From positions 1-32,903 of the forward strand of contig NW_005434496.1 in the NCBI RefSeq assembly GCF_000315625.1: a DNA stretch of 32,903 bases, in the 5' to 3' direction. The translations under genes and the position numbers were made by a program. The stretch comes from Guillardia theta CCMP2712 (taxonomy: Eukaryota > Protista > Cryptophyta). Below, piece by piece: positions 13,159 to 16,781 of the stretch; position 1 is the first letter of the stretch; the number at the start of each line of letters is the position of its first letter. The notes below the pieces were generated by a model. That model saw nothing but the letters and a program-made list of their open reading frames with translations, had not been told where the DNA came from and did not search any database.

Positions 13159-16100
13159 CTAGATGTTGTTGGGCGTCGGGACGGGGGAGTCGTCGTAGTC
13201 ATCCTGCAGCAGCTGCTCCATGTTACCTCGTTTTCCTCCTCCTCCTTCTCACCTGATCCGCCAGCGCGAAGTCGTCGTTCTCTCCCGTTGACAACCTCGA
13301 GTAACCATGAGCCTAAACAGGTTAAGCTCAGTGAAGGGGAGCGGAGAGGGAGGGAGGCGAGGGAGTGGTGGCGGGGAAGTGAGTAAGGGAGGGAGGGAGG
13401 GAGGGAGGGAGGGAGGGAGGGAGGGAGCGAGGGAGGGAGGAAAAGGTTCTTCTTGTACCCGTTGAGACGGCTGGAAGGACGAAAGCATCACCTCAGTCGC
13501 TCCTCGGATCCCTCGGCCCTTCAGGAACAGAGCAGAGGCAGCAGCACAGGCCCCGATCGCCACCACAGCCACCACACCAACCCCAACTCCACCCCAGCTC
13601 AGCCTCCTGCCCCCTTGCTCTGACGAGCCTCCTTCGCCTCCAACCGAAGGCGCCGCGTCGTTCTTGACACCGTCCTGCCGTGGGCAGACCAGCAGCTGGG
13701 GACGGAGGTCGAGACCTCCTTGGCAGGTGTTGCCCTCCACCAGGCGGTATCCCCTCGTCTGCAGGTCGAGAGCTCGTCACGAATTTGCGGGGTACAGCTC
13801 AGCACAGGCCCACCTTCGTGTAGGTGCCCAGGCAGTTAGCTGGGGGATAGGTCGGCTTCTCCCTGCCGGCACAGGACCAGACACAGGAGGAGGAGGAGAC
13901 GTTCTTGAGCGCCGCGCGCTTCTCACCAGCTCGCTCGTAGCAGAAGTCGCACTCGTAGTCTGCCTCCTGGCAGGGGCAGTTGCGCACAAGGGTTGACAGG
14001 CGGTTCTCCTTGCCGACGAAGCAGCGAGCTGTGGTCTTCCTCCTGACGTAATCGACCTGAGGAGGAGAGGATCAGACGGGACGGGAGGGAGGAGGGAGGA
14101 GTGGGAAAGAAGAAGTCGGGAGGGGGAGGGGGATGTGAAGGACAAGAGCGGATCGAGGGAAACAAGTGGGAAGTGTGGGAGATGGAGAAGGATGGAGTAA
14201 GCAGGATGCAGAGGAGGAAGCAGGGCACCTCAACAAGAAGAAGTGGAGCAGGAAGGGGACGAGAGTGCGAGAAGGAGGAAAGGAAGGGGGGCGGGAGGAA
14301 GAGAGGGAGAGGAGAAGAGGGAGGGAAGGGTGGGAGGAGGAGGAGGAGGACAGACCTGTCTTCCCATGACACAGATGTCTTGTTTCTCTCCTGACGGGCG
14401 CCACAGCGCGAAGTCCGAGCCAGGGTCACCAGCAAGGTCCACGTCCGAGCACTGGCGGGGGAAGAGCATAGAGAAATCTACGGAGAAGAAGTATGCCTCC
14501 TCCTCGCGCGGTACCGAGCCGTGCAGCAGGAAGTTGGAGCTGGCCACGCTTGGGTCACTCAGAACGTCCCTGACCTGACAAGTCGTCACCGGGCCTGACG
14601 TCAGCACACCGACCAGCTCACCTCCAGCTCAACGTCGGAGGAGAAGGAGCAAGTCTGAAAGCTTGCCCCCCCGTCGATGGAGAAGGAGATCTCGTTCGTC
14701 TCCTCTGAGTTATCTGCCAGCACCAGGATCGTTCCCTGGTCCCCGATGTCACCCACGCTCGTTCCTTTCCTTGCTCGCTCCCAACTCCTCCCCGCGTCTC
14801 TAGACACATACGTCGACGCCTCGTCCGTCCTTCCTGCCAACTCCGTCCCGACGTTGCCGACGCCGATCACAATCCCCACCGCCTTCTCGTTGCTCACCAG
14901 GGCACCGAAGCGCTCGTCCGCCTCCTTGTGTTGCCTTCTGTCCCACCTCCCAGGAGTTCCCTTCCTCTTGTGCCCCATGTGCAGGTGCAGCCCACAGTCT
15001 CTGCCCGTCGGCGTCACCCACCTTCCCTTCCTCTGGCTGTACTCGCATGCGAAGTCTCGGTCGTTGCCCGGAGGCTCCAGCGGGTGCCATTCGTTGCCGT
15101 TGTCGACGGATCGGAGGGTCCGCACGCGATTCTCAGCGTCGATGACGTTGGCGTGAAGGATTCCCCGCGGTCCCCGCAGGATGTGAAAGTCAACGTGGCC
15201 CACTGAGTCCCTCGTGTTATCCCGCAAGCTCATCACGTAGTCCTCTGCTCGAGCCCTCGTCACCCGGATATCGTCGATGTACGTCGCGTTGCAGAAGGAG
15301 GAGGAGGAGGAGGAGGAGGAGTGGGCTTGCAGCATGAGATGGACTCTGCTGATCGCTGCTCTCCCCGCATCTCTCCCTCCTTCTGCCCACACAAACTCGC
15401 TGTGCTGGCGAGGAAAGACGTACTCTACCCTCGTCCACTGATCGCTTGACTTTGACACCTTGTGGTGAACTCCCTTCTCCTCCTCCCCGCTCGCACTCCA
15501 GATGTAGCGACCAGGGAACCCATCGCTGAAGCCCTGCCATGCCACACCCAGGAACCAGAACGAGACCTTACAAGGGTAGGAGACGCTGCACGTGAAGCTC
15601 TCTAGCGAGAAGGCGTCTCCCTCCTCCCCGCATCCCGTCATCTTCATCACCTTCCCCCGACACGAGGAGCCTCCTGAGCAGAGGGGATCGTCGACGATCT
15701 TCGTACGAGAGGGCACAGCAGCAGCATGCTTGCCCCGCCATCGCGTCAGGCCTGACTCGAAGTCGTCCTTGAAGAGAACGTCCCCGTCCGCCACAGACGC
15801 ATAGATGTCGCCGACTGTGATGGAGTCACTGGGCATGCCCTGGATGCTAGTTCCCTCCTCCTGCTTCGAGTGCTCTACGCTCACAAACACGGTCCCGTCG
15901 TCCTCGTCGATGATGGTGTAGCGCGTCTCCTGCAGCTCCGAGGGGAAGACGGCAGGGAGAAAGCTCTGCGCGTCGTCCCTGGATACGAAGAGCTGCATAG
16001 TCCCATGCTCCCCTGCCACAGCCACGTACACTCCACCTTGCGACACCTTGAAGCCGACGCCATGGCGGACAACCAACCGGATGTTCTCCTGGGTGCGGAG

Positions 16101-16781
16101 CATGTCGACGGAGCGGTAGAGGTTGAGATTCTTCATGCTCTGGAAGTACTGATCTCCGACATGCTCGTCGTCGTAGGCGCTGTAGACCACAGTGTTGTCT
16201 CGCGGGCCCCAGTCAAACTGCTGAACGTAGTTGACCTTCTCGTGGAAGGTAGTCCCCCAGTCGTAGCTGACGTAGAGAGAGTTGAAGCAGAAGCCTGTGT
16301 CCGACAGCCCAAGGCAAACGTCGCTCATTCTTGAAACAAGGAGGCAGTCGGGATTCTTCTTGTGAAGCTTGATCTCCCCGAGGGGAAATTCTGTCCTGCG
16401 GGTATGAAAGGACTGACCTCTGTCGTATGTTACCCAGTGCACTTTCCCTCCTCCTTTGAAAAACACTCTTCTCTCATCTGCATCACTAGGGTACATCTCC
16501 ACCACTCCGTTGCTTGACTGCTCATCTTGAACTTCAGAGTCTTCAAGCTCTCCCATGACATTCTCGAACGTCCTGCCATCGTCCTTGCTTCTGTACAAGG
16601 TGTTCTCTTCCGTGAGGACAAAGACAACATTCTGGGTCAACCACACAACATCCTTGACAGCACCGTCCAGCTCAATCTCAGTGATCCGCAACCCCAAACT
16701 CTGACACGTCGCTACTGAGGATGATACAGCAGGAGCGAGGTGAAGACAGAGGAGCACCAGGATAGCATCAAGTCTCATCAT
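13159..16781 (-). CDS. VPS10: VPS10/sortilin family sorting receptor (signal peptide, beta-propeller, 10CC, TM helix, cytosolic tail) with an inserted jelly-roll domain
   Basis: Asp-boxes (LYRSKDDGRTF, LYVSYDWGTTF, LFVSRDDAQSF, RSVDNGNEW, YVSRDAGRSW, FSIDGGASF); AVGIVIGVGNVGTEL; 10CC motifs CVMGRQ|VDYVRRK..RCFVG, NCPCQEADYECDFCY and GYRLVEGNTCQGG; TM segment VGVGVVAVVAIGACAAASALF; tail GYSRL (YxxL) and acidic DDYDD. Exon 1 is 14622-16781; stop at 13159-13161. Confidence 0.95.

What the first reader, a model, noticed from the sequence alone, without database searches (positions are those of the whole stretch)
15246..15783. VPS10/sortilin with a ~180-aa lectin-like jelly-roll domain inserted in the middle of a propeller Asp-box
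Seen: the conserved VPS10 segment G.+Y.S...G..+..SL is split, with GDIYASVADG before and YVMSLRDN after an insert. The insert begins VLFKDDFESGLTRW, contains KVSFWF and QWTRVEYVF, and ends YIDDIRV. Established: F.DDFE.G...W and YIDD+.V termini are typical of galactose-binding-like beta-sandwiches (CBM4/9, MAM, cleaved-adhesin-like), which canonical Vps10/sortilin lacks. The insert is not bounded by introns. Inference: a sorting receptor with a built-in glycan-recognition module, possibly a new cargo-selection route (e.g. for extrusomes or surface components).
Basis: partly seen in the sequence, partly recalled or inferred. Interest (0 to 1): 0.75.

Follow-up and report, generated by a model that had tools for sequence, protein, structure and literature searches.

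The report
Sortilin receptor with inserted sugar-binding-type domain
A sorting-receptor gene (VPS10/sortilin type) of the alga Guillardia theta has a well-folded 179-residue domain, shaped like bacterial carbohydrate-binding modules, spliced into one loop of its ring-shaped cargo-binding part; this layout has not been described for this receptor family, and what the extra domain binds is untested.

Summary
The window comes from Guillardia theta. Its minus strand carries a six-exon gene (16781-13159), GUITHDRAFT_120374, 997 aa. The protein has a signal peptide, a Sortilin-Vps10 propeller, a 10CC module, a transmembrane helix, and a tail with YSRL and an acidic cluster. The Pfam propeller match breaks between profile positions 240 and 251, and 179 residues (aa 334-512, nt 15782-15246) sit inside the sixth Asp-box hairpin. 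A second G. theta VPS10 gene has that hairpin uninterrupted.

The insert is coding. Six other orthologous sequences, all that reach the N-side junction, share it; three show the C-side one. Non-synonymous change is lower in the insert than in the propeller. AlphaFold gives pLDDT 92.7, and the fold is a CBM22/CBM4/MAM-type jelly-roll.

The insert belongs to an unnamed domain family. Other members are found in dinoflagellate glucosidase-II beta subunits, in PA + C-type-lectin proteins, in giant repeat proteins and in small bacterial PEP-CTERM proteins (hhalign 98.8%).

Glycan binding and a new cargo route remain inference. It is a new variant of a known kind, of moderate interest. The scan has no earlier finding on VPS10 or sortilin.

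The parts
13159..16781 (-). Whole gene GUITHDRAFT_120374 (997 aa). The six exons are 16781-14622, 14574-14356, 14056-13814, 13758-13492, 13312-13253 and 13203-13159 (the last includes the TAG stop).
   Evidence: Each exon was translated separately and is a consecutive substring of P0001. All introns are GT-AG and phase 0. tblastn of P0001 on the window agrees. P0001 is 100% identical to the window ORF.
16719..16781 (-). Signal peptide, aa 1-21.
   Evidence: Hydrophobic N-terminus, with Kyte-Doolittle windows above 1.6 at aa 1-8; sequence.
15783..16718 (-). N-terminal part of the VPS10 propeller. It covers blades 1-5 and strands 1-3 of blade 6 and ends ...GDIYASVADG.
   Evidence: Pfam PF15902 positions 2-240 at nt 16601-15849. 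Five Asp-box hairpins align one-to-one with SorLA 3wsy.
15246..15782 (-). Inserted 179-aa jelly-roll domain (aa 334-512). It has 6 Cys, an N-terminal LFKDDFESGLTRW motif, a core with WQGF and FPG-x-x-x-W, and a C-terminal YIDDIRV.
   Evidence: AF2 pLDDT 92.7, pTM 0.88, all-beta. Foldseek top hits are CBM22/CBM4/MAM at E 4e-5. VIA Z is 10-11.4. There is no Pfam, NCBIfam or PDB-sequence hit. hhalign to the bacterial PEP-CTERM family gives 98.8%. pN is 0.21 against a saturated pS of 0.79 versus orthologue L001.
14566..15245 (-). C-terminal part of the propeller (aa 513-723). It begins EDYVMSL, which is strand 4 of blade 6, and spans intron 1.
   Evidence: Pfam PF15902 positions 251-445 at aa 514-723; SorLA alignment 530-901.
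13711..14556 (-). 10CC module (Sortilin_C), aa 727-890, spread over exons 2-4.
   Evidence: PF15901 E 2.3e-33; coordinates.
13516..13605 (-). Transmembrane helix, about aa 926-955.
   Evidence: Kyte-Doolittle 19-residue windows of 1.6-2.4; coordinates.
13162..13515 (-). Cytosolic tail, aa 956-997, spread over exons 4-6. It carries YSRL (a YxxPhi motif, nt 13303-13292) and the acidic stretch DDFALADQDDYDD.
   Evidence: Sequence. Reading these as sorting motifs rests on established knowledge of sortilin and Vps10 tails.

Best explanation
GUITHDRAFT_120374 is a type-I membrane VPS10/sortilin sorting receptor, specific to a cryptophyte lineage. Its ten-bladed Asp-box propeller is interrupted in the strand 3-4 (Asp-box) hairpin of blade 6 by a complete, independently folding 179-residue beta jelly-roll. 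That jelly-roll belongs to the galactose-binding-domain-like class (CBM4/9/22-like).

The first and last strands of the jelly-roll follow the hairpin arms with linkers of 0-3 residues. The domain is therefore probably held rigidly on the outer rim of the Asp-box face, and I infer that it sits next to the 10CC-b module.

The domain was recruited once, in the ancestor of this VPS10 paralogue. It comes from a so far unnamed family of secreted or luminal jelly-rolls that is also used by dinoflagellate glucosidase-II beta subunits, PA + C-type-lectin proteins, giant repeat proteins and small bacterial PEP-CTERM surface proteins.

Most likely mechanism (inferred, not shown): the insert adds a second ligand-binding site to the receptor, most plausibly for a glycan or glycoprotein determinant on cargo. 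The YSRL and acidic-cluster tail would drive adaptor-dependent cycling between the trans-Golgi and endosomal or secretory-organelle compartments. The insert-free paralogue would keep the ancestral function.
For: Shown:
- Receptor identity and full architecture.
- The split of the Pfam profile at positions 240/251, and the uninterrupted hairpin in the paralogue.
- Sixth-hairpin position: five Asp-box hairpins align with SorLA blades 1-5 before the break. Asp-boxes always lie in the strand 3-4 loop, and sortilin has them in blades 1-9 (PMC2716378).
- The VADG|(D/E)(V/L)LF junction is the same in six other orthologous sequences (P0002-P0005, P0036, P0132), down to about 43% identity. L013 shows both junctions, and P0002 and P0003 also show the C-side one.
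- Purifying selection: pN is 0.21 in the insert and 0.26 in the propeller, with synonymous sites saturated.
- Confident fold, with strands starting at insert residue 2 and ending at residue 176.
- Jelly-roll matches to CBM22, CBM4, CBM16, MAM, reelin and the Kgp adhesin. Concordant weak sequence signals point to CBM22 and CBM_4_9, and the language-model neighbours are CBM_4_9 and CBM27 clusters.
- Family membership: 98 hits, and hhalign 98.8%, E 4e-17, to the bacterial PEP-CTERM family.

Supporting a glycan or glycoprotein role:
- The same domain sits between the G2B and mannose-binding MRH domains of at least 10 dinoflagellate glucosidase-II beta clusters, and next to a C-type lectin.
- One bacterial relative lies in an exopolysaccharide-type locus.
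- Precedent: Vibrio cholerae sialidase is an Asp-box propeller interrupted by a lectin-like domain (PMC2716378).
Against: - No member of this domain family has a known ligand.
- The insert does not reach any Pfam CBM threshold. The structural matches form a flat list (Z about 9-11) that mixes sugar binders with protein binders, so the fold alone does not predict carbohydrate binding.
- The full-length model failed (pLDDT 34). The position of the insert relative to the ligand tunnel and to 10CC is therefore inferred from homology only.
- The Asp-box face is described as the conserved, non-functional face in glycosidase propellers (PMC2716378). That fits a structural role as well as a binding role.
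- I could not examine transcript or localisation data.
Confidence: 0.55

Rival explanations
1. The insert is a real jelly-roll but recognises protein rather than carbohydrate, as MAM, reelin subrepeats, Eph ligand-binding domains and gingipain cleaved-adhesin domains do. It might bind a specific cargo family or a co-receptor.
For: Reelin subrepeats (Z 11.4, 11.1), the Kgp K1 adhesin (Z 10.8) and MAM domains (Z 10.0) score as well as the CBMs. VPS10 receptors are classically peptide and protein binders (PMC2716378). The eukaryotic members have extra conserved cysteines, which are absent in the bacterial relatives and typical of extracellular protein-interaction modules.
Against: The sequence-level signals point to CBM22 and CBM_4_9 rather than MAM: Pfam MAM reaches only E 0.13 in one relative, whereas CBM_4_9 gives E 0.005-0.05 and CBM22 is the best profile hit in the PDB. 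The recurrent partners are glycan-handling domains (MRH, C-type lectin, trefoil).
Confidence: 0.28
2. The insert has a structural or regulatory role and is not a cargo site. It could brace blade 6 against the 10CC-b module, mediate receptor dimerisation, or act as a pH-dependent switch for ligand release.
For: It emerges from the blade-6 Asp-box. In human sortilin this Asp-box is the one distorted by a salt bridge to an arginine of 10CC-b (PMC2716378). The linkers are only 0-3 residues, which implies a fixed orientation. Asp-box faces are usually not ligand faces.
Against: The same domain works as a free-standing or tandem module in many unrelated proteins, including 200-aa bacterial surface proteins. 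That argues for an autonomous binding function rather than a VPS10-specific brace. The insert is at least as conserved as the propeller.
Confidence: 0.13
3. The insert is an annotation artefact: an unspliced intron or a mis-assembly that is absent from the real protein.
For: I could not inspect transcript data. The NCBI protein is a predicted model.
Against: The region is an uninterrupted reading frame. It is 73% identical at protein level to an orthologue, with saturated synonymous and low non-synonymous change. The junction is the same in six other orthologous sequences. The fold is predicted at pLDDT 92.7 and the domain is homologous to a large family. The real introns of this gene are 47-299 nt, and introns 2 and 4 are C/T-rich low-complexity. 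In orthologue L013, introns lie inside the insert, not at its borders.
Confidence: 0.02

Closest known systems
Sortilin, SorLA and yeast Vps10p (VPS10-domain sorting receptors; structures 3F6K, 3WSY)
   Same: Signal peptide, ten-bladed Asp-box propeller, 10CC module, a single transmembrane helix and a short tail with YxxPhi plus an acidic cluster. Pfam Sortilin-Vps10 E 4e-75 and Sortilin_C E 2e-33. phmmer E 9e-44 to SorLA.
   Different: The propeller is interrupted by a whole 179-aa domain in the blade-6 Asp-box hairpin. The vertebrate receptors are 'type 1' uninterrupted propellers (PMC2716378). Their extra domains (SorLA, SorCS) are appended after the VPS10 domain, not inserted in it. I saw no obvious furin-type propeptide site.
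Vibrio cholerae sialidase (1W0P), a 'type 2' Asp-box propeller
   Same: [quoted passage not shown]
   Different: It is a six-bladed GH33 enzyme, not a receptor. Its inserted domain belongs to a different family (Sial-lect-inser), and I did not check where in the blade it is inserted. This is an analogy of architecture, not homology of the insertion event.
CBM22, CBM4 and CBM_4_9 carbohydrate-binding modules (for example 4XUN/4XUP Xyn10C, 1K42, 4BJ0)
   Same: The same jelly-roll fold (Foldseek E 4e-5 to 1e-3, probability 1.0; VIA Z about 10.5). They share the N-terminal LF-x-DFE-x-G-x-x-x-W and C-terminal Y-x-DD-(I/V) signatures, aligned. Relatives give sub-threshold CBM_4_9 hits.
   Different: The insert itself has no Pfam hit. 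Identity is 11-19%. TM-scores are only about 0.5. The eukaryotic members have six cysteines. I could not map the known sugar-cleft residues. No carbohydrate binding has been shown.
Small bacterial PEP-CTERM jelly-roll proteins (unnamed; P0097, P0099, P0101; 45 loci, for example in Roseateles oligotrophus, Planctomycetota and Trichodesmium MAGs)
   Same: True homologues over the whole domain: hhalign 98.8%, E 4e-17, 34% identity over 142 columns.
   Different: They are free-standing: signal peptide + domain + PEP-CTERM anchor, about 200 aa, with no cysteines. They are bacterial surface proteins, and their function is unknown as well.
Dinoflagellate glucosidase-II beta subunits carrying the same domain (P0042, P0048 Polykrikos, P0050 Biecheleria, P0072 Yihiella, P0059 cluster Prorocentrum/Polarella)
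   Same: The same domain family is embedded in another luminal glycoprotein-handling protein.
   Different: There it lies between two domains in the linker, not inside a fold. It forms a separate clade in the domain tree (support 99), so it was recruited independently.

Membership tests
VPS10/sortilin receptor family | Ten-bladed Asp-box beta-propeller (Pfam Sortilin-Vps10, PF15902) | tested here: met
   E 4.1e-75, 253.7 bits against a cut-off of 33, in two stretches covering profile 2-240 and 251-445. phmmer E 9e-44 to SorLA 3wsy.
VPS10/sortilin receptor family | 10CC cysteine-rich module after the propeller (PF15901) | tested here: met
   E 2.3e-33, aa 727-890.
VPS10/sortilin receptor family | Type-I topology: signal peptide, one transmembrane helix, and a short tail with tyrosine-based and acidic sorting motifs | tested here: met
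   Hydrophobic N-terminus and a transmembrane helix at aa 926-955. The tail carries YSRL and DDFALADQDDYDD. Whether the motifs function is not testable here.
VPS10/sortilin receptor family | Continuous ('type 1') propeller without inserted domains, as in vertebrate Vps10-D receptors | tested here: not met
   A 179-aa domain lies inside the sixth Asp-box hairpin. This is the point of difference. It does not remove the protein from the family.
VPS10/sortilin receptor family | Cargo binding in the propeller tunnel and TGN-endosome cycling | not testable with these tools
   Needs binding and localisation experiments.
Galactose-binding-domain-like CBMs (CBM4/9/22, Pfam CBM_4_9) | Beta jelly-roll sandwich fold | tested here: met
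   AF2 pLDDT 92.7. Foldseek top hits are CBM22 at E 3.8e-5 and probability 1.0. VIA Z is 10.3-10.6 for CBM4-2 and CBM22.
Galactose-binding-domain-like CBMs (CBM4/9/22, Pfam CBM_4_9) | Sequence match to the family profile above the curated threshold | tested here: not met
   The insert gives no Pfam hit at E<=1. Relatives reach only 14.5-17.7 bits against a cut-off of 25.9. The family profile against PDB sequences has CBM22 4xun as best hit, at E 0.21.
Galactose-binding-domain-like CBMs (CBM4/9/22, Pfam CBM_4_9) | Carbohydrate binding in a cleft lined by aromatic residues | not testable with these tools
MAM domain | Match to Pfam MAM (PF00629) with its conserved cysteines | tested here: not met
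   No hit for the insert. One bacterial relative gives E 0.13. The only similarity is at fold level (Z 10.0).
Unnamed jelly-roll family (bacterial PEP-CTERM proteins, dinoflagellate GII-beta, PA-CLECT proteins) | Significant full-length profile similarity with the shared motifs LF-x-(D/E)DFE...W-x-GK, GDAF, WQGF, FPG-x-H-x-W-x-A, W...Y-x-F and Y-x-DD-I | tested here: met
   98 hits at E<=1e-3 and 53 at E<=1e-10 among 1.84e9 proteins. Alignment A3. hhalign 98.8%.

The most novel reading that the evidence does not exclude
The insert would define a new family of luminal or extracellular lectins, of bacterial surface-protein ancestry, that protists recruited independently into two glycoprotein-handling machines: a VPS10 sorting receptor in cryptophytes and glucosidase-II beta in dinoflagellates. 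In G. theta it would give a sortilin paralogue a glycan-based way of selecting cargo. That cargo could be destined for lineage-specific secretory organelles such as ejectisomes, in parallel with the sortilin-dependent biogenesis of Tetrahymena mucocysts (PMC3824020).
Probability: 0.2. Interest if true: 0.7.

Novelty: new variant of a known kind. Interest (0 to 1): 0.5.

Why it matters
VPS10/sortilin receptors are thought to select cargo through peptide motifs bound in the propeller tunnel. A paralogue with a rigidly inserted CBM-type domain would be the first of these receptors with a built-in second recognition module, possibly one that reads glycans. This would resemble the job that mannose-6-phosphate receptors do in animals.

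Sortilins build lineage-specific secretory organelles in ciliates and apicomplexans. This gene is therefore a concrete candidate for studying how cryptophytes sort material to ejectisomes, the periplast or vacuoles.

Separately, the work exposes an unannotated domain family with no Pfam or NCBIfam model. It spans bacteria, where it forms PEP-CTERM surface proteins, and several protist lineages. It deserves a family definition and a ligand screen.

Tried and rejected
1. Full-length AF2 model from a 9-row alignment. It failed (mean pLDDT 33.9, pTM 0.24), so the geometry of the insert relative to the tunnel and 10CC could not be obtained.
2. Word-based homologue searches. They found only P0001-P0005. 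The first search was probably swamped by low-complexity words. No deep VPS10 alignment and no named cryptophyte orthologues could be obtained.
3. Direct sequence searches with the insert against Pfam, NCBIfam and PDB sequences gave nothing.
4. A second copy of the domain in the G. theta genome. None was found, apart from a weak E 0.37 match at C5:269279-269587 that contains a stop. G. theta's own glucosidase-II beta gene lies elsewhere on C5 (about 971.5-972.0 kb).
5. The intron or artefact reading is rejected.
6. MAM membership is rejected.
7. Cluster look-ups gave no taxon names for the VPS10-with-insert orthologues; all are environmental. DNA for P0002 was not retrievable, and P0006 is too long for the contig look-up.
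8. Literature searches found no description of a VPS10 with an inserted domain, nor of this domain in glucosidase-II beta.
The annotated protein was used by its database id. The window exons were checked one at a time, and the paralogue was used only as separate exon ORFs.
Full report
**What is there.** The window is Guillardia theta CCMP2712 DNA. The 726-codon minus-strand ORF at 16781-14601 is 100% identical to NCBI protein GUITHDRAFT_120374 (P0001, 997 aa).

I translated the exons one at a time. Each is a consecutive piece of P0001: 16781-14622, 14574-14356, 14056-13814, 13758-13492, 13312-13253 and 13203-13159. All introns are GT-AG and phase 0 (tblastn).

The protein has these parts:
- a hydrophobic signal peptide;
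- Pfam Sortilin-Vps10 (E 4e-75);
- Sortilin_C, the 10CC module (E 2e-33);
- a transmembrane helix at about aa 926-955;
- a 42-residue tail with YSRL and an acidic cluster.

It is a complete VPS10/sortilin-type receptor. The database protein was used by id, and the paralogue only as separate exon ORFs.

**The observation.** The Pfam match falls into two stretches. Profile 2-240 lies at nt 16601-15849 and profile 251-439 at nt 15242-14634. About 200 residues therefore occupy the place of about 10 profile positions. Against the SorLA structure 3wsy, query 55-309 aligns with chain 44-286 and query 530-901 with chain 328-670.

G. theta has a second VPS10 gene (G000:C109:45442-47081) in which the profile is covered without a large gap. 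There the hairpin reads ANVYMSGPEGSSYTLSLR in one piece. The window gene reads GDIYASVADG-[179 aa]-EDYVMSLRDN. In frame the insert is nt 15782-15246 (aa 334-512).

Before the break, five Asp-box hairpins align one-to-one with those of SorLA. They contain LYRSKDDGRTF, HWVTYDRGQSF, LYVSYDWGTTF, LYRSVDML and LFVSRDDAQSF. According to Quistgaard and Thirup (PMC2716378), Asp-boxes always lie in the strand 3-4 loop, and human sortilin has them in blades 1-9. So the insert sits at the tip of the strand 3-4 hairpin of blade 6, just after the conserved glycine.

**It is coding, not an intron.**
- Four environmental proteins of about 60% identity keep the insert.
- Over the insert, the window and the genomic contig L001 are 73% identical, against 64% for the whole protein.
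- Between these two, synonymous sites are saturated (pS 0.79). Non-synonymous change is 0.21 in the insert and 0.26 in the N-terminal propeller.
- A more divergent genomic orthologue, L013, has the same junctions VADG|ELLFKDDFE and RVTRAGS|EDYVMAL. Its two introns lie inside the insert, not at its borders.
- Two fragments of about 43% identity (P0036, P0132) show the same N-terminal junction.

The insertion is therefore ancestral to this paralogue clade and under selection. I could not look at RNA-seq.

**Fold.** With a 24-row alignment, AlphaFold2 gives mean pLDDT 92.7 and pTM 0.88. The domain is all-beta; its first strand starts at insert residue 2 and its last ends at residue 176. The linkers to the propeller hairpin are thus only 0-3 residues long.

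- Foldseek against the PDB is led by CBM22 (4xup, 4xuo, 4xun; E 4e-5 to 2e-4). CBM4-2, CBM11, CBM6, MAM domains, Cry toxin domain III and Eph ligand-binding domains follow.
- An independent all-against-all structural search gives Z 10-11.4 for a Vip3 C-terminal domain, reelin subrepeats, the Kgp K1 cleaved-adhesin domain, a porphyran CBM, CBM4-2, CBM22, CBM16 and MAM. The list is flat, so only the fold class is identified.
- Sequence signals agree weakly. Relatives reach sub-threshold CBM_4_9 scores; one match covers profile 2-129 of 136.
- The family profile's best PDB sequence hit is CBM22 4xun (E 0.21), aligning the LF-x-DFE-x-G-x-x-x-W start and the Y-x-DD-(I/V) end.
- Language-model neighbours are CBM_4_9 and CBM27 clusters.

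**The insert belongs to a wider, unnamed family.** An HMMER search of 1.84 billion representative proteins with the insert profile gave 98 hits at E<=1e-3 and 53 at E<=1e-10. Only P0001-P0005, P0036, P0065/P0132, P0094 and P0008 (L013) have VPS10 flanks. The other contexts are:
- at least ten clusters of glucosidase-II beta subunits, with the domain between the PRKCSH-like N-domain and the MRH domain; the named ones come from the dinoflagellates Polykrikos, Biecheleria, Yihiella, Prorocentrum and Polarella;
- a protein with PA + C-type lectin + this domain, whose cluster includes a Picozoa sequence;
- a 5235-aa environmental protein with at least nine copies, and tandem two- and three-copy proteins;
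- an Ancoracysta protein, and trefoil and GON combinations;
- roughly 200-aa bacterial proteins made of signal peptide + domain + PEP-CTERM anchor.

The relation to the bacterial group is solid: hhalign gives 98.8% probability, E 4e-17, over 142 columns. That group occurs in 45 loci of reference genomes from Planctomycetota, Verrucomicrobiota, Proteobacteria, Acidobacteriota, Trichodesmium and others. One member lies beside Bac_transf, GT2 and DUF642 genes.

The eukaryotic members share cysteines that the bacterial ones lack. The G. theta insert has six.

In a quick tree the VPS10 inserts form one clade, and the glucosidase-II beta domains form another (support 99). The bacterial proteins group with Ancoracysta (98). 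This points to one recruitment into VPS10, independent of the one into glucosidase-II beta, with no donor identified. G. theta has no second copy of the domain.

**How it probably works.**

Shown:
- an intact receptor with trafficking-type tail motifs;
- a conserved, confidently folded jelly-roll grafted with minimal linkers into the blade-6 Asp-box hairpin;
- a canonical paralogue without it.

Inferred:
- The domain is held rigidly on the outer rim of the Asp-box face. It lies close to where 10CC-b contacts the blade-6 Asp-box in human sortilin (PMC2716378). It adds a second binding surface to the receptor.
- Its recurrent partners are sugar-handling domains (MRH, C-type lectin, trefoil), its nearest structural and sequence neighbours are CBMs, and its bacterial cousins are exosortase-sorted surface proteins. 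I therefore consider a glycan or glycoprotein ligand most likely. This is untested, and protein binding (MAM or reelin style) is a serious rival.
- A purely structural or regulatory role is less likely, because the domain works autonomously in many other proteins.
- The link to ejectisomes is speculation by analogy with sortilin-dependent mucocyst formation in Tetrahymena (PMC3824020).

**Comparison with what is known.** The protein is a member of the VPS10 family on all testable criteria except the uninterrupted propeller. PMC2716378 classes vertebrate Vps10-D propellers as 'type 1' (uninterrupted). It gives Vibrio cholerae sialidase as the 'type 2' example, with a lectin-like domain inserted in an Asp-box propeller. 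The G. theta receptor would be a type 2 case within the VPS10 family.

I found no paper describing this, or the domain in glucosidase-II beta. The scan holds no earlier finding on sortilin or VPS10.

**Verdict.** It is a new variant of a known kind. Interest is moderate (0.5): a clear, conserved and previously undescribed architecture, plus an unannotated domain family, but no evidence yet on ligand or pathway.

**Dead ends.**
- The full-length model failed.
- The word-based searches gave too few VPS10 relatives.
- The orthologues carry no taxon names.
- Two contigs could not be fetched.

Noticed in passing
P0042, P0048, P0050, P0052, P0057, P0059, P0061, P0072, P0043, P0038 (no window coordinates): Glucosidase-II beta subunits carry the same jelly-roll domain between the PRKCSH-like N-domain and the MRH lectin domain; the named ones are from dinoflagellates (Polykrikos, Biecheleria, Yihiella, Prorocentrum/Polarella). 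I found no paper on this. G. theta's own glucosidase-II beta gene lies at about G000:C5:971.5-972.0 kb, and no second copy of the domain was found anywhere in the G. theta genome.
   Followed up: partly
L014-L058 (GTDB genome contigs); L011:6001-6648: A family of about 200-aa bacterial proteins (signal peptide + this jelly-roll + PEP-CTERM anchor) has no Pfam or NCBIfam model. It occurs in 45 loci across Planctomycetota, Verrucomicrobiota, Proteobacteria, Acidobacteriota and Trichodesmium. One copy lies next to Bac_transf, GT2 and DUF642 genes.
   Followed up: partly
G000:C109:45442-47081 (minus strand; loci L004, L007, L008): A second, canonical VPS10 gene of G. theta without the insert, about 30% identical to the window gene. 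It has introns in the propeller region.
   Followed up: partly
P0006 (5235 aa, ENA contig of 18.9 kb): A giant environmental protein with at least nine copies of the domain. P0007, P0104 and P0010 carry two or three tandem copies. The contig could not be fetched because the protein exceeds the tool's length limit.
   Followed up: no
P0017, P0110, P0112 (cluster includes a Picozoa sequence): A PA domain + C-type lectin + this jelly-roll in one protein. This is another possible luminal or surface receptor architecture.
   Followed up: no
window 14355-14057 and 13491-13313 (minus strand): Introns 2 and 4 of the gene are long runs of C/T-rich low-complexity sequence (CCTCC and CCCT repeats). This contrasts sharply with the roughly 61% GC coding sequence.
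   Followed up: no
L013:1937-2066 and L013:2497-2684: The divergent orthologue from Logan run SRR14578326 has two introns inside the insert that the G. theta gene lacks. Intron positions therefore differ between lineages, and none marks the insert borders.
   Followed up: partly
G000:C5:269279-269587 (L003): The only other weak match to the insert in the G. theta genome (E 0.37, 31% identity, one TAG stop inside). It is probably chance.
   Followed up: no
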